Part shown: one piece after another, positions 8,012 to 36,160 of the stretch
Layout of the letters: each line of letters starts with the position of its first letter
How positions within the stretch are numbered: position 1 is the stretch's first letter
Assembly: GCA_964252035.1 (NCBI GenBank)
Contig: OZ176200.1
DNA length: 64,000 nt
DNA from: Podarcis erhardii
Taxonomy: Eukaryota
Strand: one strand, 5' to 3'
Made by a program: the position numbers and the translations under genes
The notes under the pieces: generated by a model
Database searches by the model: none
Told to the model about the DNA's origin: nothing
Seen by the model: the letters and a program-made list of their open reading frames with translations, nothing else

Positions 8012-8297
8012 CAGATGGCCACTTTCTTTCGGGCCACAAAGGGATGGCAGGGAGAGCCGGGCGGCATACGAATGGGCAGCTCACGTGACCCGCGCGAAGC
8101 TTGACGTGGGTGACCATATGGCGCGTGCCGGGGGAAGGCTGACGCAGTCGCTGGGTGGGTAGGGGGGGTGTAGCGGGAGGGAGGAGGAGCGAAGGAGGTG
8201 GAGCTTGCTGCCTGGCCATCCCCAGGGGGTGCCTTCGCTGCCCGCCCCCTCCTCCCCCTCCACCCCCCAGCAGAAGAGCCTCGGCTATATATATAAG
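8012..8297 (+). promoter_or_regulatory. NEUROD1: NEUROD1 proximal promoter: E-boxes, CRE-like site and TATA box
   Basis: CAGATG 8012-8017, CACGTG 8082-8087, TGACGT 8102-8107, CATATG 8115-8120 and TATATATATAAG 8286-8297. Proneural bHLH E-boxes are an established feature of NeuroD1 promoters. Confidence 0.8.
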
Positions 8298-8319
8298 CGG
8301 AGTCTCCTGCATGCAGCCT

Positions 8320-8448
8320 CAAGGAAAAAAACACACATAAATCCAATAAAAAGTGGCACGTCCCTCCGTCGTAAGGAAAGCTTCCCAGGAGCAACAGGGT
8401 TATGAGACCATCACTGCAAAGGACACGCTGAAGAAGAAAAAGAGAAAG
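8320..8448 (+). other. NEUROD1: NEUROD1 non-coding exon 1 (5' UTR); TSS approximate
   Basis: Starts about 30 nt after the TATA box and ends at donor AAG|GTAAAT (GT 8449-8450). NEUROD1 is known to have one non-coding and one coding exon. Confidence 0.75.
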
Positions 8449-10461
8449 GTAAATATTTGATTCCCTCCTTAGCACCCATCTCCTCTTTATACAGTATGGG
8501 TGAAGGATATGCCTAAAAAAGAAAAGGGGAAAAAAGCACCCCAACCCATCGCACGACTAGCTTTATTTCCCCAGAAGGCTATTATTTCCTCTATCTGAAC
8601 GAAATAAGGATGAACCATTGGATTGGCTCTTTTCACTATATTTTTATTTTTTAAAAATATTTTTTTAATGACCTTTCTTGTTGGCGAACTCTTTTCGCCA
8701 CACGCTTGGGTCCAGTACGATCTTACTCGGGAGTAAAGCATGGGCATAGCCAAGGGAGGGGGAAGGTGGGGTAGCTGTCCCCCTAAATCAAGTAAATCAA
8801 TACAAAATACTTAACTAGCTGAGGTTCTCCCCCCCCCCCACAGCATAAAGCCTGCTCCTCCCCCAACATAAATCCCGGCAAAACCCATGAAGTAAAGACC
8901 CGCCGATCCAGCGCTCTCGACCTACTCGCTAGAAAGCGCGCGTTGTATGACATCCTTCAGTTCCCCCCATCTGCGTTTCTGCTGCTGCGTCAAGCCGTGT
9001 GAGGCGCAGCGACACAAAAAATACGGTAGAAATGATCCGAGGAATCCGTAGCAATGCCTTGTTGCGCATGGCACTGGTTTTTTTTGGGGGGGGGGGGATC
9101 AGAGCCAAATCGAATCCAGTAGACCTTGTCCTTACAGATTGGAAGGAGTGTGGGCTGCAGTCTAGAACAGGTTCCGCTGGATTTCTTTCTTTCTTTCTTT
9201 TGGCGGTGGAAAGAGAGAAGAAAAATGGGGTGTCAAATCAGTTGATAGGACTCGCCCGTCCTTTGACAGGTCAGGATTGGGAACTGGCGGGTTGCTTGCT
9301 AAAAGGGAGAGGGAAGTTCCTATATGGGGAGAGGGAAAGTTGGCAACAGATGGGTCAGGTTTCGCTCCCCATTGCCGCTGGAGGGAGAGGGGCTGCGCTG
9401 GTGACGGAGAAGCAAACGGTTTCACTCAACTGTTGCATTTGGATCGCCTTGTAGTTCCGGAGGCTTCGGTAGCGTCGCTTGCCTAAGACGGTCAGGATCG
9501 GTCCATCCCCTTCATTAGCAAACGCTTCCTCTCGCAAGGTTGGGGATCCTCAGGCAGAAAGGGGGGTGGGGGGAGGCAGGGGAGGGGTGGTTTATTAGAG
9601 AGGCTGTGGCTGCACCTGATCCCCTGTCTGGGCGGCAGACTTTGGCTGGACTCTGAACAGTTGGGAAGTCTGCACGGCTATTGTAGGGGAGAATGAAGTG
9701 GCAGAATGAAATGTGGGCAGAATGAAAAGGGGCACCCAACTCAACGGATAAATCCTGCCCGGGCTGAATAATCGTTGGCCATTTGTCCCGCTGATTCTGC
9801 TGCTGCGTGATGTTCTCTCCCCCACGCCCGCCCCCCCCCCCGACACATTTTCTTCTTTTCGATTCTCTCCGTCAAATTTCATTCTATCTATAATCTCCTT
9901 AGAGAGCCACCACCAACACTAATATAAACACGTTATATAATGCTATTTGAGACGATCGGTCTCTTTGTGGCGGAGACGCGCGGAGAAAAGTCGAAGTTTT
10001 TTTACTGGGGAAGGCTTAGGAGTCAAGAGAGTCTAAAGCTGCAGTACTCTTTCGCCTCGGAGGAAACTCGGTTGAATTTAATAGGACGTCTCAGTAGACG
10101 GGGTGAGGATTGCGTCGTAAGTTTCAAATTGCTAGGAAACTTCTTTAAGAACCCAATTTGCAGAAAGTCGCATAGAAATGTAGGGGGTGGGGTGGTGAAA
10201 CTCACCAAAGCCAATTATCACATTGTAATCCATGTGAACGGAATAACTATTATAGAGCTTCCTAAATAATGCTGACAAGGAGAAAATCCTGTGCATTTCT
10301 ACTCAGAAGTAAACCTCGCTGGTTTCAGTGGCGCTTACTCCGTGGCAAATGCATTTAGGATTGTAGCCCCGGAGGAAGGGCTTGGAGGAAGTTATTGGGA
10401 GTGTCCTCTCTGCTAAATGCCTTTTCTCTTGTGATCTCTTCCGCGCGCAGGATCCTGCAGG

Positions 10462-11559
10462 ATGACCAAATCGTACAGCGAGAGCGGGCTGATGGGGGAG
10501 CCCCAGCCGCAGGGTCCCCCCAGCTGGACGGACGACTGCCTCAGCTCCCAGGACGAGGAGCACGAGGCGGAGAAGAAAGAGGGCGACCTGGAAGCTATGC
10601 ACGCCGAAGCTGAGGTGGACTCGCTGAGGAATGGCGAGGAGGAAGAAGAGGAGGAGGAAGAGGACGACCTCGAAGAAGAGGAGGAGGAGGAAGAGGAGGA
10701 GGAAGAAGAAGAAGAAGAAGACGATCAGAAGCCCAAGAGGCGCGGTCCCAAGAAGAAAAAGATGACCAAGGCCCGCTTGGAGAGGTTCAAGCTGCGGCGC
10801 ATGAAGGCCAACGCCCGCGAGCGGAACCGCATGCACGGCCTCAACGCGGCTCTGGACAACTTGCGGAAGGTGGTACCTTGCTATTCCAAGACGCAGAAGC
10901 TGTCCAAGATAGAGACGCTGCGCCTGGCCAAGAACTACATCTGGGCCCTTTCGGAGATCCTGCGCTCGGGCAAGAGCCCCGACCTGGTCTCTTTCGTGCA
11001 GACTCTCTGCAAAGGCCTGTCCCAGCCTACCACCAACCTAGTGGCCGGCTGCCTGCAGCTCAACCCGAGGACTTTCCTGCCTGAGCAGAGCCAGGACCTG
11101 CCTCCGCACATGCAACCGCCCAGCGCTTCCTTCCCGGTGCACCCTTATGCCTACCAGTCGCCTGGGCTGCCTAGCCCGCCTTACGGCACCATGGACAGCT
11201 CCCACCTGTTCCACGTGAAAGCGCCGCACTCCTACGGCGCGGCGCTGGAGCCTTTCTTCGAGAGCGCGCTGGCCGAATGCGCCAGCCCTTCCTTCGACGG
11301 GCCCCTCAGCCCGCCGCTCAGCGTCAACGGGAACTTCTCTTTCAAACACGAACCTTCCGGAGAGTTTGAGAAAAATTATGCCTTCACCATGCACTACCCC
11401 GCCGCCGCCGGCCTGGCGGGGACCCCGGGACACGGATCGCTCTTCTCCTGCTCTGCCTCTCGCTGCGAGATCCCCATCGACAACCTCCTGCCCTACGAGA
11501 GCCATGCCCACCACGAGAGGGTCATGAGTGCCCAGCTCAATGCCATCTTTCACGACTGA
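10462..11559 (+). CDS. NEUROD1: Neurogenic differentiation factor 1 (bHLH), 365 aa, entire CDS in exon 2
   Basis: Begins [35 protein letters not shown], then an acidic tract, KKKK NLS, bHLH ([56 protein letters not shown]) and ends [16 protein letters not shown]. Acceptor CAG at 10448-10450 lies 11 nt before the ATG. Confidence 0.99.
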
Positions 11560-13200
11560 GCCCTTCCAGAAGCGTCAGGGCAGAGGACCCAAGGGGCATC
11601 GAGGGGCTGCCTTGCTTCGGAAGGGGGACCCCCACAACACAGACACCCACCCACCCTAGGGCTCCAAGTGCAAAAAGCCCGGAAGGGGCAAAGGGGGGAA
11701 CTTCCAAACACCAGAGTCATCTATATAAATATATGGGGAGGCTACATTTTTCCTGGTCCCCCTTCTGTAAATCCCACCTCCCTCCGCTAAGCTTCCCAAC
11801 CCGCACGGTCCCGAATGTAAATCTGCACTATCAATTTAGTGTAGAAGAAAGTCAGCCAGTCTCCCCACTGATCTGATCGGGACAAAAAAAAAAAAAAATC
11901 ACAAGCAATAATTAGGATCTATGCAATTCTTATTATTATTTTTTTGTTTTTGAAACTAGACGTGGGCCAGTTAAAAAAAAAAAATCGAAAAAAGTATATA
12001 TAAAATGTCTATTTTTCAACCAGCATTTTTCCTACTTGCTACCTTTTCCCATGCCGAATTATTTTGTTGTGGTTTTGTACAGAATTTTTAATAACTTTTG
12101 ATAAACTATTTTAAACCATGCAGCTTCATCGATTTTTATACGTATTGGAAACAAAGTAGAATTATATCTAATTTATACGAAATAATTTAAGTAATTTAAA
12201 CCAGCAGAAAAGTGCTTAGAAGAGGTGTGTGGGGAGGGGGGGATGTTCTGTTGCCTTAGCACCTCCCCGCCCCGTTCATTTTCCTTTCACGTTCTTCACA
12301 CACACAAATGCACAGCGCCAGCAAAGTCTTTCCCATTAAAAATTTCGTTTCCTTCCAGTAAGAACCAGATTCCTACAGGGTTTTTGGATTTATTTATTTT
12401 TAAATGGAAGTAGGAAAATATTTATTTCCTATTGGAACATGTCAATCCAACGGAAGGTTTGCAAAACCTTATGTACGGATAGAGACACCCTCCCACCCGC
12501 CAGACATTCTTGTTTTCATAAAGAAATGCCAAGTTCTTCCCTTTTTTCCCGAATCAAAAGCTGCTTGACTATCACATTCAATTTGCACTGTTTCTTTTTA
12601 ATCTTTGGCGTCCCCGTCCTTTCTCCTCACGTGATTTTGAAGAGAACAGAGATAACTTGAAAACACTTAATGTTTCCAGGTAATGATAAATGCATGATAT
12701 ATATATTTTTAAATATATACATAGTCACATGAATCGGTGGTTTGTCATATTTCCGTCCAGGAGTCGAAAAGCCAATCAGGTTCACTATGGTTGGGGTTGT
12801 TATATAATATGCTGGTGGATTGTAGTCAGTAGTTTCAAACCCATTCGAACCATTTGACTTCGTAATTAGAACAATATAGTTATTATGCATGTACAATGCA
12901 ATCCGCAATAAGTGCTGTCTGAAATGTAACGCTGGTTCAACCGAACTCAATCTGTACTGTAATTTTGTTCGTAATCCTGTATATGACTATGTAATGCACA
13001 TTTGGGAATTTAGTAAGCACACCTTTGGAACGAGATAGTAAGGAGACGTCCGTCAAATGTTGCATTTCTCCTTAAATATGATTCCCCTCTCCTTTCCCCC
13101 TTCTTAGTGTGAGCAATTCCTATGGGATTATTGTAATAGTTCCTTAAAAAAAGGTGCAACCTTTACTTATTTGTACAATAAACGGAAGTTTAAGAAAAAA
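11560..13200 (+). other. NEUROD1: NEUROD1 3' UTR, probably ending after AATAAA at 13177-13182
   Basis: AU-rich sequence after the stop codon. TGTAC-AATAAA is the first canonical poly(A) signal I found. Confidence 0.7.
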
Positions 13201-13219
13201 ACAAAAAACAAGGTGCAGT

Positions 13220-13520
13220 CCAATAGCAACCTGACTACGGGTGGGAGGTGGGAGGAACGCATCGCTAGCGAGCAAGGTTCCCTCGGAAATCTGATCTGGA
13301 AGTCAAGGCGAGCTCGCATTCATGCGCTCACAGTAGCAACCGCTCACCGGGCCAAGGCCCTACGTAGCTGTCCTGCTCTGCGGTGCTGAAATCCCACAGG
13401 GAGAGACGGAAAGATCGGCCAGCAAAGCCAACTCCACAGCGCCCAGTGATTAATTTGTAGAGATTCTGCTGCTGCTCTGGACCAAACAGGAAGCCACGCC
13501 CTCTGACCTGTAAGCGCTTT
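13220..13520. promoter_or_regulatory. Small CpG-rich element just downstream of NEUROD1, containing a split RE1/NRSE
   Basis: Local CpG cluster. The minus strand at 13364-13390 reads TTCAGCACC-N8-GGACAGCTAC. Confidence 0.65.
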
Positions 13521-14637
13521 GTAGCCCCCCAAAGATGGAGAAGGGGAGCTGGCAATAGTTATTCGGTGGAGAGGGGGAAAGCTCTGCAGAGCACTGAATG
13601 TATGGTACTCAGACAGGTTCTGGGACTCTTACGCCTTGGGTGTGTGTTACTGCATCTGAAAGTAAACTGAAATAAGTGGTGGTTTGATTTCTCTGAAGCA
13701 AGTCAGAGAAGCGATTGTTTGGGTTGGATGGAGGGTGGCAGTCGCCCTCACTTTGTGTCCAGACCATCTGTGGTCAAAATTCAGGAGTGCCATATCCTAC
13801 ACACAAATCTTACCAGGAGTCATAGGTAGCTCTTGTTTGCTCCGCTCCTTCCTGCTCTCACTCAAATCTGATCAATATGGATATGTGTTCCTTTAGAGTG
13901 GGGAGGACACTTCCGTATGCTTGGGTTTCACACATGTAACTCTTCTACCAGGAATACATCTGTTTCCAGTCATCATGACATCTAAAGAAGTAAGCAATGC
14001 AACATACTTTGCTCTTTGCAATTATATTTTGAATGCTTCCAAGATCAGACCTCAGACCTTTCCAGGACATTCTGCCTCACATCTCCAGTACCATCTGAAA
14101 TTTGAATCTTGCTGCTACCCCTGACCTAGAGTATCTACTGGCACTGACAGCACCATAACTAAGATTTGGGGTCCTGCAGCAAGCAAGGATGGTGATGATG
14201 GGAACCCACCAACTGCTCATGGAAAGGCATAGAGAAGATGGTTTCTATTTCCCCAAGCAGGAGGTAGCATAGAATCCCCAGCATTCCAGGGATTTATTTT
14301 TTAGCCTTTGGTGACTGCCTTAGATATATAACAGCATCTGAATTCAATTGTGGTTGGTCTCCCCAGAACAAATCATGTTTCTGCCTGAAGCTGGTATTTA
14401 TGTGTTTAGGCCAACCCCGGTTTTTCAGTCTGCTCCTACCATTAATTGCTGCTGCCAAGTTGCTGGTGAATCAGGATTCAAGTTTATGTTGCTAACAAGC
14501 CCATTTAAAGGCTCCAGTGCAGGGAAAGTTTGGTACACACTAGTGCTACTGAAACCCAGCTGCCCTTTGCTAACAGTTGTTAATTCATGATCACTAGGCT
14601 TCCAGACTGCTGGCAGGCTTGCACAAATATCTTACAA

Positions 14638-14775
14638 TGAGGGATGGAGAATTTGTGGCCCTCCCAAAGTTGTTAGACTACAGTTCTAATGATCCCTGAC
14701 CATTGAACATGCTGACTGGGACTCTCAGGAGTTGGAGTCCAGCAACATCTGGTGCGCTGCAGGTTTCACACACCT
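14638..14775. mobile_element. Degenerate palindromic hAT-type MITE (squamate 'ccagatgtt..gactac..ctccc' family)
   Basis: Resembles the intact copies at 21916-22180 and 49152-49287. Other decayed copies at ~19555-19648, 25406-25532, 54035-54165 and 63182-63272. Confidence 0.55.
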
Positions 14776-17700
14776 ATTTCATGTTGTCTCCCTAATGCAC
14801 CATATACAATCAAGAGCAGACATCATGAGCTGGAGTAACACTGTTATGGATGTGTGTGACAAAAGTAGGAACTAGTTTGCATATACAGGGATGCATGCTT
14901 AAATCAGCATCCATAAGCCTGTTCCATTATGATGAACTGGTAACCCTACTGTTTGGTGTGAATATGTATTATGAGGTTCATTATGGCTACACCGTAGCAC
15001 TAAAATACTGAGGGAGGGATTAAACTATTGAGCCCTATCAGCAAAAGTTTTGTACAAGAGCTTCTACTTCTGCAATGGGGCTTCCCCACTCTCACCAACC
15101 CACATGCCCCCAAATTGTCTTGAGAAGGTTGGGAGAACCTCAAGAACAGTTTGCTGGGAGAGGAGGCAAGGACTCATTCCACCTGGCAAGCTGAAATGCT
15201 TGTCCTCATGTAACATCACCTTAGCATGTTGTTGAATTCTTCCCTGAGACACAATGTTCCTCAGGACTGTTTGCATTTCATTATGCCATGCACAGAGAAA
15301 GTGCAGAATGGGCTATTATGCTTCCCTGAGAATCTCAGCATTCTTTTCCATTTTCAAAGAAAAAAATATCTACCACTTAATTTCAAGTGTGGTTTATTTG
15401 GGTTGGGTTTTTTTGTGTGTTTTTTTTTTTTTTTGGAGGGGGGCAGTAATACTTTTGTGTTTGCAACAATGCAAAATAAAACACACACAAAATCTGCATG
15501 TGTTCAACCCCCACAAAAATAAAATTAAGGTCACCATGTGAGCCCATAAGATGAATCTCAACATCCACATGAGGGCAATACTTTAGTGGACCAACTAAAA
15601 TGACCAAGCTGTCACAAATGAGCGTGCAACAACATTTTGATTTCATTTTCTCCAGAACTCTTAATCAGGTCTGGTGGCAAACAAAGCAATGAGAAGGGAG
15701 GGGGGAAATGTTTGGTGGTGAAGTCAAGAGTCTGTTTTGGGAAAGAGGCTGAAGATGGAATGCAGGTGGAAGGAGCAGACATGCAAATGAGGTTCTGTAA
15801 GATGCTCTGCAGGTTTCAGGTTGCACCAATGCATCCTGGGAAGGAGAAATTTACAATGGCTAGTTTCCCACCTCTAAAAATACAAAAAGGCATCTGTTAC
15901 ATGTCTGTCCTTAGGAGAAGCACACAGCTTGCTTGGTAGGTGGAAAGCAGGAAAAAAGAGGGGGAAAGGCAGGTTTTATATAAATAAAGGTGGGAATTAA
16001 TTGTAGGTGGTGTGCTAGGTAAAAATATTCAACCCAGTAATCCTTTGTTCTCCAGATGATGCGCAGGGACAGAGGAAGTGTCAGTGTTTTTGTTGTATTT
16101 TTGGGGGGAGGGGACCCAGAAAGTTCCCTGGAGTTTGTTCCTTCTCTAACTGCTAGTCAAGGTCAAGGCCTGTCCTCCCCATGCCTAATGAAAGTGTGTG
16201 AGAAATGCCTGGTGAAAACCACAAAGCCGGAGGAGGAGCTGCTGCTTTACAGTGATCATAAGAGCACAAGAAGATCCCGGCTGGATCACAGCCAATGACC
16301 CCTCTAGCCTAGCATCCTGTTCTCCCACTGGTCAACTAGATGCCCGTGGGAAGCCTACAAGACAGACATGAACACCACACCACTCAGTGGGCAAGCAAAC
16401 AGAAAGGAAGGGTGCAAAAATACAACGTAAAATTCATCTTATCCTTCTCAGATTTCTGTTTTTCTTGGTGCGCAGTTATCTTTTCTAAAGTTTTTTTTTT
16501 AATGCACAGCCATGAGGATAGTGGGCAGGGTATATTACATTTGCCTTTTCAAATGCATATGCTTTTATTGTTTGATGTGGAGGAAGGGCAGAATAATTTA
16601 CTGGTAGCAGGACTACCTTTGTTTCCTGCCTGCCCTGTAGGTAGCAACTTACTGAGCTGAAACCCTTTCTAGTAGTTCTGGAAACAGAGAAGCAGTTCTT
16701 AGCTGCCTCTCCTTTGTGCCTAGTTACTATGAAAGGAGATCTGCATTCAGGAAAGGGTGTATGCAGTCTTCATACTGTCTCTTGTTTCCTCCCTGGGTTG
16801 CCTGGCAGTTGAATTAACACAGTGATAGCTTCCTACTGCTTCCAGAGTTCTTAACCTCAGCAGCCTTAATTTAGAAAGGGGAACATTTGGTGCTCCTGTT
16901 GTTAAACAATTGGGAGTCAGAATCCTTGCTGACCACTTACAGATCTATCCATAGATCCCAGTCTACTTTTTGCCCAGCTCTGGTTTGTTGTCTTGAAGAG
17001 CAGACGGGCAGAAGGCAATTGCCCTGAGGCAAGACTGTGGGTGTATGATTGCAAATACAGTATTATTTACATTTACACCCTAAATTTCATCCACGGAACT
17101 CAAGAAAGCATGCATAAAAATCCTAGATAGTCTCCCATTTTGGGACTGATCAAATGCAGACCTGTTTAGCCTAGCAAAGTGGTTGTATCATGTACCTGCA
17201 GAACATGCTCTGGAACTGTTAGAATGTTCACATATCAACAAAACCTTCCAGAACTTTAAGCCTCATCATTGAGGTAATGAAACCGTGTATCTCTGAACAT
17301 CCTCAGCCACAACTGCCATTTTTCAAAACTCCATTCTTCTCAATATTCCAAATGGATGATGCTGAAATTTGTTTCTTCTTTTTAAAATGAAAACAAACCC
17401 TGAGTACAATTGGTCACTGGTAATCTACTGATTGACACGCACAAGCATGTATTTGACAACCTGGCTTCTCTTTGATGGAGCAAAATCCTAGAATGGCAAC
17501 TTAATGGTTCCTCTCACAGCATCTGAGCTTGGAGTGTTTTCTCTGCTGTTGCATGCCAGAGACTCATCTTGGCTCTGAGGCAGTAAGAAAGCAATTTGCT
17601 TATTCCAGGATGCAGGGCATGCATCCTTTATGGAGAAGTAATGGATTAGAACAAGTTGCCTGGAGAATAATGTTTTGGCACCACCCTCTAAATATTCAGC

Positions 17701-19479
17701 TGCCATATTCCCCATACTAAGCTGTGTTTACTGCATAGCTTTCCTTCTTGAGACAAGGTCATGATCTCAGTTTACTATGCCCAATTATGTTATTTTATTA
17801 TTTTTAAAAGAGTGACACATGTGGTTTTACATTTTCATTTTTCTTACCTTTCAGGGTTCTTGCACACAGGCTGAACAATAAGTGATCTAATCAGGCCAAC
17901 AAGAAGAAAGTAGTTACAAGCATTGTATATAAGAGCTGCGGGACTTCATCATGATTGTATGAAAATTCTGTGGCGTTTAGAGGGTTTTTCTGGTAAAAAA
18001 TGAGGTGACGTTATCGTATCTTGATAAAAGTGCTGTGCATGTCAGCCAAAAATGCAGCAAAGAAGAGGTGGTGGCAGTCTGTGTTGGTGAGTACCAACAC
18101 AAAAAAGCACCATGAAAATTATTCCAAATCAAATGAGTGAGATTTGGCTACTGTAGGCAAACATGACCCTTATGTTTAAAAGACAAAAAAATCCAAAAAA
18201 ATCCCAACATAAATGCCAGTCAGTTAGACCAAGACAGTTGCAAGATGATTGTCTTCCAGTATTTTATTTTTTTCAATTGCAGCATATATAAAGATTTGTT
18301 CACTTTGTTCACTTGTTCTGGAGAGTTAGTTCTGAAGGTGGAAAAGTGGTGTCACAAGGTCTAAAAAAGAGAGAGAGAAATCTGCTCCGTGTTTTGTTCC
18401 TTTTGGTTAAGTGCTTCCATTCCAAATAGAAGGATTCTTCCAGTCAGTCAAGGGGCAACTCAGATGCCACCATCTTTTATTCAAAGGCAGGCACAGATGT
18501 TCCTTCTGCAGGGGAGGTTTTAATTTATGAAAATGATATTGTTTATGCATGAATGCACTCCACATAACACACAGTACTTCCATCTGATGAGAGAAAACTG
18601 CAGAACCAGTGCCAATGTCAGGAACATATTCTGCAAATTTAGTCACTTAAATGTTTAATGAATATTTGGAAGGCATTTGCAAGCCACAAGAAAGCTTTTC
18701 AATTATTTCCCCCTCTTCACAGCTAATAATCATTTTCACCTCCTCCAGCCAATGCAATTGACTGTGGTATGACAAATGTTTGATGCTGTAGTACTTCAAA
18801 ATAAATAATAATCAAAAGAACAAACAAGCTCAATTGGATGGTGGTGAAATATTTGGGTGGGCAGATGATTAACTTTACACATTACCTGGGCATTTTTTGA
18901 AAATCCAAGCCGGTAATTTTTCTCATGAAGAATTTTGTACTGGAATATATATTTTTTTATTAGCTAGCAAAGGCAAGCTGATAAGAATTGTGTTTCCAGG
19001 TATTACTATTAATGACACTGATAGAAGTTGGCAGTGGTGCACAGCTCTGATACCAGCAATACAAGGAAGAAGAATGCCAGTAAATTGATCTGTCAATTGT
19101 GGAAAGCGGTGGCTGGGAGTAAATCTCTTAATTTACAAATCCAGCCTTATAGAGTCGCTACTGTTGTTTTGTCTCAAATTTGTGTAGAAGGCATTTCCTC
19201 ACCACAGCTGCCACAAGCCTCTTCCATTTTCCTAAAGTGTTTTTGGGGAGTGATGCAAGGTAGTCCACTCTAAAGCACCTTTCATCTCAAACTCCTGTCC
19301 ACTCAAGTTAACCTCATTGTACACAGGTGTGTGTGGGGAAAATATCAGCTCTTGAGAGGTGGCTTAAACAAACAAACAGAATAAAATCTGCTCCAGTCCT
19401 TAGAAACTTGTTTAACAAAAGTTATTACTTAATAATCATCAACTATCAAGAGTGGGGTAGTGGGTGGGTGGTTAACTGT

Positions 19480-19552
19480 GTCCTGCCAGTTGTTGGAAGT
19501 CTAGATGACTCTTTGGGTCCCTTCCAGCTCTATACAATTCTGTTATTCTAAT
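19480..19552 (+). mobile_element. CR1-type 3' tail fragment
   Basis: ctagatgac..gggtcccttccagctct..attctgttattcta matches the recognisable CR1 3' end. Confidence 0.65.
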
Positions 19553-19659
19553 TCCCACAATCCCTAACAATTGACCATGCTGAAGGGTCCTGATATGGGA
19601 GTTGACGTTCAACAGTGTTTGGAGGGCTACAAGTTCTTTGACCCTGAACATAATCCTAG

Positions 19660-19725
19660 CACTGTACCTGAGCCCGGCTTCGGCTGGGGAGGGCGGGATA
19701 TAAATAAAATTTATTATTATTATCA
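19660..19725 (+). mobile_element. L2-type LINE/SINE 3' end
   Basis: gggaggcgggatataaataaaatttattattattat is a typical squamate L2-related tail. Confidence 0.5.
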
Positions 19726-20861
19726 GTAGCAGACACTTTATTGTAAAAGAAGGACATACTTTTGTTGCTTAGTTCTACAAAAGCACTTTAAAAAAAAGAA
19801 AAAGAAAGGCGCAGCTCTTTATATTCTACCAAACTAGATTGGGCCCCAAGTGACTGGAATTTACCATGCCCCAAAGAATAGCCTAAATAGGTCACTTAGC
19901 TGGAAGACCACTACTATGACTGGTTCTCCCACAACATAAAATATATTAATACATATTAGAGTGGTGAGTTGGAAATTTGGTTTGCAACCGAGCTGTTGTT
20001 TAAATGCATATGTGTTTTTCCCTAATTAAAAATACATACATACATTGAAATATGTACTTAACAAGCTGTCACAAGTAAGGTAATCCAAATTAAGCCTGAC
20101 ATCACTCTTAATGCATTCACTTATACTATTAAATTGTTGGCAGGGTGTGCAAGGCATTGAATTGCTGCATTTAATTTTCAGATTCTGGGCACTTTGCGTC
20201 ACAGACTGAGTGATATTTAAGATGGAAAGCATAAATGAATACCTGTGGTATGTAGCCTGTAACATCATTCTGGGAACACCATCCTACAAGGCGGAATCCC
20301 ACCCCCCCACCCCCAGTTAATGGGCACTGCCATTCAAATGGTATGTAGGGGCTGCATCTTGGGGGCAGGATTGGGCTTACCTGTCCCCCAATTCTTAATT
20401 CACCTGGTCACAGGTGAGAGTTGAGTGCAGGATGGGGAGCAAAGGTGGACAAGCCAACCCAGAAGGAGCATGACATGTCCCCCATCAGAGTACTACCCCT
20501 CCCCTAACACCCGATACAACCAAGACTGTGAAGCAGGGCCAGTGAAGTTTGTGGCTTGGGGACTTTTTTGAGGCTCCGGCTGTACTGTGAGGCTGGGACA
20601 GTCATATTTGGTTCCCAGGCCTGAGGTTCTGCACAGGCCTTATCTATAACACCAGCCTTCACCACCCTGACCCCCTCAATGCTTTGGAGCACAACAGATG
20701 TTTTGTAGCCCAAAGGTGTTGGGTTAGTAAAAGCTGCACCAACCCTGCGCTCAACCAGCCTGGCTCTCTATAAACTGCCTGGCTATCTGCATCAATAAAC
20801 AAATAGGAAAATTCACATCACCAAGGTTGCTACCCCAGTCTCCTTGGACTTAGGATCATAA

Positions 20862-20900
20862 TGCAACAACAACAACAACAACAGCAGCAACAACAACAAT
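20862..20900 (+). repeat. (CAA/CAG)n microsatellite
   Basis: caacaacaacaacaacaacagcagcaacaacaacaa. Confidence 0.9.
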
Positions 20901-21915
20901 ATAGAAGGAGGAGGAGGAGAATTTATTGCTCTATGCTCAAGCAATCAAATTGGAGATGAACATATCCAGTGCTTTTTTAAAAAAAAAATGTTTAGGGGTA
21001 CTCTTATTTTCCTACTCATATTGAAATACTGCCCCTCAATGAGGCCAAACCTAGATTCACAAGATGTTTAGATTTATGCATCCCCCTGCACCCCCCCCCC
21101 CAGAAAAAGCACTGAACATATTTATAAAATCCAGGTTAGCAATTTTCATCCTGTGCTAATGTTGCATTCACTGATTGGATAGAAAACATGCACTGAGAAG
21201 TGGCTTTTTGGTGTGAATATTGCAGCAAAACCAGGAATTCATTAATGTGAGTAGCAAACCTCCCACTATTTTTCTTTTCTTTTCAGAAACAGAGTGTGTA
21301 CATAAATGTCATATTTAATCCTTCTGAGGGGAAAAGAGGCAGGAATAGGTCCATCTTTTAGGTTTGTTGCATTTGTGAGAGAGTAGGAATAACTTCCGAA
21401 AATGAGCTACATACTGACCTCTTTAAGGAAACGTAACAATCGGCTTGCGTACTCTAACCATGGTGACTCAGACCAGGTAACAGTGCAAAGATTTTAGATT
21501 TCAAGAAAGCATTTCTAAACAATCATGTGCCCCAGTTTAGTAACTGTTGATGGGCACTGCCACTTCAGTGCTCAACTTGGCCTTATATTGCCTTACATGC
21601 CTTTATTGGTGCCATATATCCCAGGGGCCAATATTTGGCTGTTGCTTCTGCGCAGCTGTCCTCAATTCAAAAGCCTTTTCCCCAAAGACTTCACTTTCTC
21701 TGGGAAAATAAGACTTTTGTAATTGTGGTTGTAGAGATTCTCTGTGAACATTTCTGGGTGTGGGTGTCATCTTACTCCCAAACAAGTTAATGAATAGAAG
21801 ACTCTCTCCAATAACTTCTGCAGGGAAACGAAGAGGATGCATTGGCAGAAAAGGTTGGGGAAGGGTGTCGCTTTTATTCTTTTGAGCAAGCAGTTTATAA
21901 ATTAATCCATTATAC

Positions 21916-22180
21916 CAATGTTTCCCCAACTTTTTTGGACTACAACTCCTATCATCCCCTAGCTAACAGGACCAGCAGTCAAAGGATGATGGGAACTGTA
22001 GTCCAAAAACAGCTGGAGACCCAAGTTTGGGAAGCTCTGAAGCAGCCTTTCTCAACCTGTGGGTCCCCAGATGTTGTTGAACTACAACCCCCATCACCCC
22101 TAGCTAGCGAGGCCAGAGCTCAGGGATGATGGGAGTTGTAGTCCAACAACATCTAGGTACCCACAGGTTGAGAACCGCTG
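21916..22180. mobile_element. Two adjacent palindromic hAT-type MITEs (21916-22039 and 22043-22180)
   Basis: Each has inverted ends (e.g. ctcaacctgtgggtcccc...cccacaggttgag) and inverted internal arms (actacaac.ccc atca / tgatgggagttgtagt). Confidence 0.8.
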
Positions 22181-23220
22181 CGTGAAGTAAACCAACAGGC
22201 AGTTTGGTGATTGGATAACACCTGTGTCCTCCCCACCCCTTTCCCTCTGAGGCAACTGAGCCGCGCTTTTCCGTGCGGAGGAATTCAAAAGAACCATCCC
22301 TCTCAGTCTCGCGGCTCTTTTCCCGCCTTTCAGGAAAAGTTTCCCTCCTCCTTGAGGCCAACCCCGTGACCAGGGCGGGGCGGGAAACGGGCTTAAAAGT
22401 TGGTCGCGAGGGAGGCGCGGAGATGGCCGAGGTCGCGCGCCTAAGCTCAAAGCCGAATGCGCGCGCACGCTCCCCCTCCCCCTCCCTCCTCCAGCTGGAC
22501 CCGGGACAAGGGGGAGGAGAGCGGCTCGCTGCCTTGGTAGCGGCGGCGACGCGCTGAGGCGCCTTTCCTGTCCCCTTTCTCCTTCCCAGCTGGAGGAGCC
22601 TGCCTGCCATGCACCGCCCCGGGAGGAGGATAGCCTGGGCCGCCGAGAGCCCGGAGAACCCTTTCGGGGTGGCGGCAGCAGCAGCAGCAGCGGGCGCTGG
22701 GTGGAAGGGAAGCGACGGCGCCCCCTCCTCCCGCTCCTCTTCCTCGACGGAGGAGGAGGGAGCAAAGGGGGCGCCCCCGGTGCGGGCGGCGGAGGCGGGG
22801 GACGAAGACGAGCAGCCCCTCCTGAGGGGGATTTTCGGCGTCGGCAAGAGGAGCTGCGACGTGGTGCTCAGCGCGCGGAGGCTCAGCTGGAGCCCCATCC
22901 AGCCCGAGAGGCCCGTAGGTGAGAGCGAGCCAGTGTGAGGAACAACAGCAAACGCCGCTGCTTGGATTTTTCTTCTGCTCCGTGCAGAGCTTCGGCGGGG
23001 TTTACCGCCGCGTAAGCGGAGCTCCAGCCCGAGCATAGCAGGAAGGGCTGCTGAGTTCACAACGGGTCTCGAACCCGCTTCGGCAGCGCCTGCAGCGCAG
23101 CCTCAGTTCCTTTCGTGCCCTCACATTCCGCCGCCTCCATCCCGCCCCCTCTCCGCTGTGTCACTCAAAGATACAGGTGGGCAGGGAGGACGTGACGTCA
23201 GAGGGTAGCCTGCCTCTCTT
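22180..23220. promoter_or_regulatory. CERKL: CERKL CpG-island promoter (TATA-less)
   Basis: Very GC/CpG-rich. Contains a GC box and GCGGGAAA (E2F-like) at ~22373-22387, ATTGG at ~22210, and a full CRE (TGACGTCA) at 23193-23200. Confidence 0.8.
22609..22918 (+). CDS. CERKL: Ceramide kinase-like protein, coding exon 1
   Basis: GCCATG Kozak context. Encodes [33 protein letters not shown], matching the CERKL PH-like start. Donor G|GTGAG at 22919, phase 1. Confidence 0.92.
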
Positions 23221-35917: not shown

Positions 35918-36160
35918 GTGGTTCCAACGTGGGCTTGACAAATGAAGAGGAATATGTCGAAATGAAAGATGTATTTTCCGTAAAACTGAAACGCCGTCGT
36001 TTTGCTGGGCAGCAAAAAGGTGGCCTATTATTAGGTATCACAGTTTTTGTCTGCCTGAAAAAAGAAGGAAACAAACTTAAGGATTCTGTCATCAACTTAA
36101 GTAATTTAAGTGAGGACCATTGTTACCTGTGGTTTAAGCATTTGAAGGAAATTTTGAATG
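35918..36160 (+). CDS. CERKL: CERKL coding exon 2 (243 nt)
   Basis: CAG| to |GTAAG. Encodes [19 protein letters not shown]...[18 protein letters not shown]...[19 protein letters not shown], with the KLKRR NLS retained. Confidence 0.97.

What the first reader, a model, noticed from the sequence alone, without database searches (positions are those of the whole stretch)
8449..22611. NEUROD1 promoter may drive CERKL through a dedicated splice acceptor 19 nt before the CERKL ATG
Seen: the CERKL first coding exon is preceded by a strong acceptor, cctttcctgtcccctttctccttccCAG|ctgg (AG 22588-22589), which a purely first exon does not need. The nearest clear upstream + strand donor is NEUROD1 exon 1 (GT 8449). 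Joining 8448 to 22590 gives an intact full-length CERKL ORF and skips the uORF at 22423-22557. Established (recalled, not checked here): human and mouse retina produce CERKL transcripts starting at the NEUROD1 promoter. Inference: this two-gene transcription unit is ancestral to amniotes, has a hard-wired acceptor in lizards, and may explain why the genes stay linked.
Basis: partly seen in the sequence, partly recalled or inferred. Interest (0 to 1): 0.8.

Follow-up and report, generated by a model that had tools for sequence, protein, structure and literature searches.

The report
Acceptor-like tract before lizard CERKL start
A splice-acceptor-like pyrimidine tract does sit 19 bases before the CERKL start codon of this wall lizard (Podarcis), but it lies in ordinary promoter/leader sequence, is not conserved across lizards, and nothing here shows that the neighbouring NEUROD1 promoter splices into it.

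Summary
Every coordinate in the finding checks out: NEUROD1 exon-1 donor (GT 8449), uORF 22423-22557, pyrimidine tract plus CAG (AG 22588-89), and CERKL ATG 22609. In a pyrimidine-collapsed model the site scores like a real acceptor, ranking 41st of 4397 AGs. A twin site 95 nt upstream scores as well, and 16 donor-like GTs lie nearer than 8449.

The tract directly follows a palindromic element conserved from lizards to turtle. In eight species, a tract ending in CAG close to the ATG occurs only in Podarcis, Rhineura and Thamnophis. It is absent in Elgaria, Anolis, a skink-like genome, Eublepharis and Terrapene.

Published work already shows that NEUROD1-promoted CERKL transcripts occur in human, mouse and chicken but not frog or zebrafish, and that they skip CERKL exon 1. 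RefSeq isoforms lacking exon 1 exist in Zootoca, Hemicordylus and Anolis sagrei.

The decisive RNA test could not be run.

Verdict: the tract is most likely promoter or 5' leader sequence with incidental acceptor potential. The dedicated-acceptor idea is untested and somewhat disfavoured, and the two-gene unit is already known.

The parts
8284..8298 (+). TATA-like box of the NEUROD1 promoter (ggctatatatataag)
   Evidence: Read directly. Its function is inferred from its position about 150 nt upstream of the exon-1 donor.
8320..8448 (+). Inferred non-coding NEUROD1 exon 1 (5' end approximate). It contains a 9-codon uORF, ATG 8402 to TGA 8431.
   Evidence: The exon is inferred from the TATA box, the donor and the exon-2 acceptor. 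No RNA evidence was obtained.
8449..8450 (+). GT of the NEUROD1 exon-1 donor (AAG|GTAAAT)
   Evidence: Donor matrix score is 7.1, above 21% of 38 real CERKL donors.
10451..11559 (+). NEUROD1 exon 2 from its acceptor (cgcgcag|GAT) to the stop codon; CDS 10462-11559, 365 aa
13177..13182 (+). AATAAA, the likely NEUROD1 polyadenylation signal that a read-through transcript would have to ignore
   Evidence: pattern only.
18300..18870 (.). Deeply conserved non-coding element between NEUROD1 and CERKL.
22423..22557 (+). 44-codon uORF in frame with CERKL, closed by TGA 22555-57. It is relevant only if the transcription start lies upstream of 22423.
   Evidence: Its ATG and the second upstream ATG (22457) are absent from the aligned Rhineura and Elgaria sequence.
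22470..22494 (+). Twin site: a C-rich pyrimidine tract ending in CAG|CTGGA (AG 22493-94), also containing CAGCTG
   Evidence: rank 26/4397. It lies within the block that is 92% identical to Rhineura.
22528..22541 (.). Palindromic 14-mer GCTGCCTTGGTAGC, the core of a promoter block conserved from squamates to turtle
   Evidence: alignment A2. The resemblance to an RFX X-box is recalled from memory, not tested.
22562..22589 (+). The finding's tract: 25/26 pyrimidines followed by AG 22588-89, with a putative exon start at 22590
   Evidence: Whether it is used as an acceptor was not tested.
22486..22598 (+). Inverted repeat (arms 22486-21 and 22563-98) that includes the tract. As RNA it would form a hairpin of about 110 nt with the palindrome at its apex.
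   Evidence: z = -2.1. Rhineura gives z = -2.8 to -3.2. It is not significant in the six other species.
22609..22918 (+). Coding part of CERKL exon 1 (103 codons plus 1 nt); donor GT 22919-20
   Evidence: The peptide is 96% identical to Podarcis lilfordi CERKL.
35918..36160 (+). CERKL exon 2, the acceptor used by published NEUROD1-promoted isoforms. It contains the conserved internal Met (VEMKDVF).

Best explanation
The tract and its CAG belong to the CERKL CpG-island proximal promoter or 5' leader. The promoter is built from alternating pyrimidine-rich and purine-rich runs around a deeply conserved palindromic element at 22528-22541. The run just downstream of that element varies in length between species, and in some lineages it happens to end in CAG, which produces an acceptor-grade sequence.

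Canonical CERKL mRNA most likely starts locally in this island (inferred). If lizards make NEUROD1-initiated CERKL transcripts, they most likely follow the published amniote pattern: the NEUROD1 exon-1 donor joins intergenic exons or CERKL exon 2 (acceptor at 35918), exon 1 is skipped, and translation starts at the conserved Met in exon 2.

Shown here: the sequence features, their partial conservation, and the existence of exon-1-less isoform models in other squamates. Inferred: the position of the transcription start, and that AG 22589 is not used.
For: - GC content is 0.64 in 22001-23000.
- Two near-identical tract+CAGCTGGA sites lie 95 nt apart and form an inverted repeat. This points to local compositional architecture, not one dedicated splice site.
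- The block 22469-22556 and the 14-mer are conserved in all eight species. The segment between the 14-mer and the ATG varies greatly in length. It is CT-rich in most species (only a few pyrimidines in Eublepharis), but it ends in a clean YAG near the ATG only in Podarcis, Rhineura and Thamnophis.
- Published NEUROD1-promoted isoforms in human, mouse and chicken lose exon 1 entirely. In chicken, primers in the neuroD1 5'UTR and cerkl exon 2 or 13 recovered only exon-1-less forms (PMC3650063).
- RefSeq models lacking exon 1 exist in Zootoca (a lacertid), Hemicordylus (four transcripts for isoform X7, plus an alternative first coding exon in X5) and Anolis sagrei.
- About 40 AGs in the window score as well as this one, and only about a quarter of those are real acceptors.
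Against: - No RNA data were obtained, so use of AG 22589 is not excluded.
- The site scores like the real exon-2 acceptor.
- It is unlikely under local shuffles (P = 0.018).
- No AG occurs between 22559 and 22587.
- The CAG is retained in Rhineura and Thamnophis although the sequence after it differs. That is what a splice site would predict, and an E-box would not.
- The transcription start was not mapped.
Confidence: 0.55

Rival explanations
1. Transcripts started at the NEUROD1 promoter skip NEUROD1 exon 2 and its poly(A) site. They splice 8448 directly to 22590 and give full-length CERKL with a short leader that lacks the local uORFs and hairpin.
For: - The donor and acceptor are both of usable quality.
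- The join keeps the ORF and removes uATGs 22423 and 22457 and the 5' arm of the predicted hairpin.
- The NEUROD1 promoter is a proven alternative CERKL promoter in amniotes.
- The CAG is kept in Rhineura and Thamnophis.
Against: - Published chimeras skip exon 1 in all three amniotes studied.
- The AG is absent from 5 of 8 species.
- The only adenosine 18-40 nt upstream is A22557, in a weak branch-point context.
- 16 nearer donor-like sites exist.
- There is no RNA support.
Confidence: 0.12
2. AG 22589 is a genuine acceptor, but it is used by another upstream first exon or by unspliced read-through from an intergenic promoter, not by NEUROD1 exon 1.
For: - The sequence is acceptor-grade.
- Many donor-like sites lie in 13.2-22.5 kb, for example 20413 and 21476.
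Against: - The conserved intergenic blocks look like enhancers, not exons. The donor-like GTAAGG at 20075 is not conserved.
- There is no RNA support.
- The AG shows the same lack of conservation.
Confidence: 0.15
3. The tract is kept as the 3' arm of a structured leader, or a DNA inverted repeat, that pairs with the purine run 22510-22521 and regulates CERKL translation or transcription in lacertoid lizards.
For: - An inverted repeat of 36-nt arms is present.
- The predicted hairpin has z = -2.1 in Podarcis and -2.8 to -3.2 in Rhineura, with the conserved palindrome at its apex.
Against: - It is not significant in the six other species.
- GC-rich pyrimidine/purine runs pair easily.
- It is unknown whether the 5' arm is transcribed.
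Confidence: 0.1

Closest known systems
NEUROD1-promoted CERKL isoforms of human, mouse and chicken (Garanto et al. 2011, cited in PMC7917623; Riera et al. 2013, PMC3650063; Domenech et al. 2020, PMC7425692)
   Same: The gene order and strand are the same: NEUROD1, then CERKL, then ITGA4 on the opposite strand in the comparison loci. NEUROD1 has a non-coding exon 1 with a good donor. The idea is the same, that the upstream gene's promoter serves as an alternative CERKL promoter in amniotes.
   Different: The published isoforms drop CERKL exon 1 and its ATG. Chicken adds an intergenic 5'UTR exon. No such form is reported in the papers read here.
Conjoined or read-through transcripts between tandem same-strand genes
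   Same: The model requires skipping the upstream gene's terminal exon and poly(A) site (AATAAA at 13177) and splicing its first-exon donor to a downstream gene's acceptor.
   Different: Such transcripts normally enter at the downstream gene's exon 2. An acceptor inside or just before the downstream gene's first exon is unusual and has not been demonstrated here.
CT-rich / GA-rich elements of TATA-less CpG-island promoters
   Same: The region has GC 0.64, runs such as CCCCCTCCCCCTCCC followed by GGGGGAGGAGAG, a variable-length CT run next to a conserved factor-site-like palindrome, and a position within 150 nt of the ATG.
   Different: No factor binding or transcription start has been mapped here. 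The tract ends in a clean CAG in three lineages, which a promoter element does not require.

Membership tests
NEUROD1-promoted CERKL transcription unit | NEUROD1 lies immediately upstream of CERKL on the same strand | tested here: met
   NEUROD1 CDS is at 10462-11559 (+). CERKL exons run from 22609 to about 59790 (+).
NEUROD1-promoted CERKL transcription unit | A non-coding NEUROD1 exon 1 ends in a functional donor | tested here: inconclusive
   The TATA-like box, the AAG|GTAAAT donor and the exon-2 acceptor 11 nt before the ATG are present. The exon is inferred, because no RNA or cross-species check was possible: none of the loci reached NEUROD1.
NEUROD1-promoted CERKL transcription unit | Chimeric junction seen in RNA | not testable with these tools
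Exact look-ups of window proteins found nothing.
NEUROD1-promoted CERKL transcription unit | Chimeric isoforms lack CERKL exon 1 and its initiator Met (the published pattern) | tested here: not met
   The proposed 8448^22590 join keeps all of coding exon 1. It is therefore not the published type (PMC3650063).
U2-type 3' splice site | Polypyrimidine tract followed by YAG, with no AG in the last ~30 nt | tested here: met
   25/26 pyrimidines in 22562-22587, then CAG. The previous AG is at 22557-58. Rank is 41/4397 in the pyrimidine-collapsed model.
U2-type 3' splice site | Plausible branch-point adenosine 18-40 nt upstream | tested here: inconclusive
   The only A in range is 22557 (CUGAG), a 4/5 fit to yUnAy. 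This was read; the consensus is from established knowledge.
U2-type 3' splice site | AG conserved in related species | tested here: not met
   A clean tract+CAG near the ATG occurs in Podarcis, Rhineura and Thamnophis only. Elgaria, Anolis, the skink-like GCA_029204185.1, Eublepharis and Terrapene lack it.
U2-type 3' splice site | Used in transcripts | not testable with these tools
CpG-island proximal promoter / 5' leader | GC-rich island at the 5' end of the gene, with conserved non-coding motifs just upstream of the ATG | tested here: met
   GC 0.64. Block 22469-22556 is 92% identical to Rhineura, and the 14-mer is conserved to turtle.
CpG-island proximal promoter / 5' leader | Mapped transcription start within the island | not testable with these tools
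   No CAGE, 5'RACE or read data were available.

The most novel reading that the evidence does not exclude
Lacertoid lizards, and perhaps snakes independently, evolved an acceptor just before the CERKL ATG. Transcripts initiated upstream, at NEUROD1 or at an intergenic promoter, could then encode full-length CERKL while bypassing a structured leader that carries uORFs. This would be a full-length variant of the amniote NEUROD1-CERKL unit, which otherwise yields only N-terminally truncated protein.
Probability: 0.12. Interest if true: 0.55.

Novelty: already known. Interest (0 to 1): 0.25.

Why it matters
[quoted passage not shown] Its many promoters and isoforms have already defeated one mouse knockout design: deleting exon 1 and the proximal promoter gave only a knockdown (PMC7425692). 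If a vertebrate lineage made full-length CERKL from the NEUROD1 promoter, it would show that the shared transcription unit can deliver the canonical protein under neurogenic or photoreceptor control, and it would offer a natural comparison for isoform function. As things stand, the two-gene unit and its restriction to amniotes are published, and the linkage is better explained by shared conserved enhancers. The lizard-specific acceptor remains an inexpensive hypothesis to test, not a result.

Tried and rejected
   - One search ran a local tblastn of CERKL proteins against it. Searches counted AG sites for background.
2. Exact look-ups of the window's exon-1 ORF and NEUROD1 protein found nothing. 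Look-ups of Varanus P0001 and Hemicordylus P0113 and P0114 also found nothing.
3. A homology search with the exon-1 peptide returned only three Logan ORFs that read into intron 1. They look avian or non-squamate and show no 5'UTR splicing.
4. The T-weighted acceptor matrix was rejected as a fair judge, because it scores the GC-rich acceptor inferred for NEUROD1 exon 2 at 0.0.
5. The E-box reading (CAGCTG, a NEUROD1-type site) was considered. It is weakened because Rhineura (CAGCGG) and Thamnophis (CAGGGA) keep the CAG but not the E-box.
6. Candidate intergenic exons were examined.
   - The top-scoring acceptor at 17855 aligns only to Rhineura.
   - The conserved block 19720-20300 is AT-rich with TAAT motifs, and its GTAAGG is not conserved, so it looks like an enhancer.
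7. The share of words held by the RNA runs (0.23-0.30) fits an exon starting at 22590 and one starting about 70 nt earlier equally well, so it is uninformative.
8. A search for the Hemicordylus alternative first coding exon (MVGMPYTC) in the window found no match.
Full report
**What is in the sequence**

The window carries NEUROD1 and the whole CERKL gene on the + strand.
- The NEUROD1 ORF is 10462-11559. It is preceded by an acceptor, cgcgcag|GAT, so exon 2 starts at 10451.
- About 2 kb upstream there is a TATA-like box at 8284-8298 and a donor AAG|GTAAAT with GT at 8449-8450.
- CERKL exon 1 codes from ATG 22609 to 22918, with donor GT at 22919. Exon 2 starts at 35918. Further exons run to about 59.8 kb.
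- The exon-1 peptide is 96% identical to Podarcis lilfordi CERKL and 92% identical to P. muralis, so the window comes from a Podarcis wall lizard.
- The uORF from ATG 22423 to TGA 22555-57 is real and is in the same frame as CERKL.
- Joining 8448 to 22590 keeps the ORF and removes that uORF. NEUROD1 exon 1 contributes its own 9-codon uORF, 8402-8431.

**Is the feature more than chance?**

- Sites with at least 18/20 pyrimidines plus YAG occur 18 times on the + strand of the window, or one per 3.5 kb.
- In dinucleotide shuffles of the 200 nt before the ATG, at least one such site arises in 1.8% of trials. Two are observed.
- The second site (AG 22493-94) has almost the same ending, tract+CAGCTGGA.
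- I built a matrix from 38 real CERKL acceptors recovered from the window and six other loci. With that T-weighted matrix the candidate scores only 1.9, rank 498 of 4397 AGs. The same matrix gives 0.0 to the GC-rich acceptor inferred for NEUROD1 exon 2 (no RNA check), so it is biased against GC-rich contexts.
- When C and T are treated alike, the candidate ranks 41st, the twin site 26th and the real exon-2 acceptor 43rd.
- The sequence is therefore acceptor-grade. But about 40 AGs in the window score as well, and only about a quarter of those are real.
- The statement that NEUROD1 exon 1 is the nearest clear donor does not hold. Sixteen GTs between 8449 and 22560 score at least as high.

**Context and conservation**

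The region 22001-23000 is a CpG island with GC 0.64. I fetched the CERKL 5' regions of seven other species:
- Thamnophis sirtalis
- a skink-like genome, GCA_029204185.1
- Rhineura floridana
- Elgaria multicarinata
- Anolis carolinensis
- Eublepharis macularius
- Terrapene carolina triunguis

All share a block whose core is the palindromic 14-mer GCTGCCTTGGTAGC, at window 22528-22541. The segment between this element and the ATG varies greatly in length. It is CT-rich in most species (only a few pyrimidines in Eublepharis).

A tract ending in a clean CAG close to the ATG is found in three species:
- Podarcis, 19 nt before the ATG.
- Rhineura, where ...CTTTCTGCTTCAG|CGGCTGGAGGAG is homologous by eye to Podarcis ...CTTTCTCCTTCCCAG|CTGGAGGAG.
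- Thamnophis, with ...TTGTTCGCAG|GG, 17 nt before the ATG.

In the other five species the best AG in the last 120 nt either scores below zero or lies upstream of the conserved 14-mer:
- In Elgaria and the skink-like genome the tract is followed by a G-run and then AAG.
- Anolis has CCAAG.
- Eublepharis has essentially no tract.
- Terrapene has TTGGAG.

So the AG is not a general lizard feature.

In Podarcis the two tract+CAGCTGG sites are arms of an inverted repeat, 22486-22521 and 22563-22598. As RNA, this folds into a hairpin of about 110 nt with the palindrome at the apex. The z-score is -2.1 in Podarcis and -2.8 to -3.2 in Rhineura, and it is not significant in the other six species.

**What is already known**

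- Riera et al. 2013 (PMC3650063) report that human and mouse CERKL use the NEUROD1 promoter.
- The same paper reports that RT-PCR from the neuroD1 5'UTR to cerkl exon 2 or 13 is positive in chicken but negative in zebrafish and Xenopus.
- In chicken a new 5'UTR exon between the genes is used.
[quoted passage not shown] - Domenech et al. 2020 (PMC7425692) restate that the NeuroD1 promoter is an alternative Cerkl promoter. They attribute the drop in NeuroD1 expression after Cerkl deletion partly to NeuroD1 regulatory sequences inside the Cerkl locus.
- Synteny of the region extends over 1.8 Mb between human, Xenopus and zebrafish.

The 'amniote-ancestral two-gene unit' is therefore published. 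Linkage persists in lineages without chimeric transcripts. The intergenic element at about 18300-18870, conserved to turtle at 77-89%, fits the shared-enhancer explanation.

**Indirect transcript evidence in squamates**

RefSeq protein models lacking exon 1 exist in three squamates:
- Zootoca vivipara X3 starts at the Met of VEMEDVF in exon 2.
- Hemicordylus capensis X7 has the same start and four transcript accessions. Its X5 has an alternative first coding exon.
- Anolis sagrei X2 also lacks exon 1.

These show that squamates use alternative 5' exons that enter at exon 2, as mammals and chicken do. They do not say where those exons lie. All Podarcis models keep the canonical N-terminus, so they are uninformative about the leader.

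**What could not be done**

- The window's own NEUROD1 and exon-1 products are not in the contig collection.
- No squamate transcript contig with a CERKL 5'UTR could be retrieved.
- The word shares of the RNA runs (0.23-0.30) do not discriminate between an exon start at 22590 and one somewhat upstream.
- The decisive junction test therefore remains open.

**Verdict**

But it lies in compositionally biased promoter or leader sequence, has an equally good twin, is kept in only part of Squamata, and would produce a junction unlike any published NEUROD1-CERKL isoform.

| Reading | Probability |
|---|---|
| Promoter or 5' leader sequence with incidental acceptor potential; any NEUROD1-driven CERKL transcripts follow the exon-1-skipping pattern | about 0.55 |
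| AG 22589 used by some other upstream exon | about 0.15 |
| Structured-leader or inverted-repeat function | about 0.10 |

Interest is low to moderate. The known part is already published, and the new part is untested but cheap to test.

Noticed in passing
window 22528-22541 (block 22469-22556): The palindromic 14-mer GCTGCCTTGGTAGC is nearly invariant upstream of the CERKL ATG in seven squamate and turtle loci. It matches 10/14 positions of the RFX X-box consensus as I recall it. It may be a conserved CERKL promoter element.
   Followed up: partly
window 22486-22521 and 22563-22598; L003 9845-10006: An inverted repeat folds as a hairpin of about 110 nt around the 14-mer. It is significant against shuffles in Podarcis (z = -2.1) and Rhineura (z = -2.8 to -3.2), but not in the six other species.
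   Followed up: partly
window ~18300-18870: An intergenic non-coding element is conserved at 77-89% in all seven loci, including turtle. It is probably a NEUROD1/CERKL enhancer.
   Followed up: partly
window 19720-20300: An AT-rich element with TAAT/TAATCC-type motifs is conserved in Rhineura, Elgaria, Anolis and the skink-like locus. A donor-like GTAAGG at 20075 is not conserved, so it looks like an enhancer and not an exon.
   Followed up: yes
proteins P0227, P0232, P0233, P0235 (Zootoca, Hemicordylus, Anolis sagrei): RefSeq CERKL isoforms lack exon 1 and start at the conserved Met in exon 2 or at an alternative first coding exon. Where their 5' exons lie is unknown.
   Followed up: partly
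window 8402-8431: A 9-codon uORF lies inside the inferred NEUROD1 exon 1. It would also head any NEUROD1-CERKL chimeric mRNA.
   Followed up: no
window 10462-11559: The NEUROD1 protein has an unusually long acidic run before the bHLH domain, about 35 Glu/Asp residues nearly uninterrupted.
   Followed up: no
L002 10001-10130: In GCA_029204185.1 the gene model starts at an upstream ATG that is in frame with CERKL, extending the N-terminus by 42 residues. The homologous ATG in the window (22457) is out of frame and closed by TAG 22538-40. The extension is probably an annotation artefact.
   Followed up: partly
P0052 (Gavialis gangeticus CERKL model): The predicted N-terminal extension resembles retroelement-derived sequence joined inside exon 1. 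It is likely a spurious gene model.
   Followed up: no
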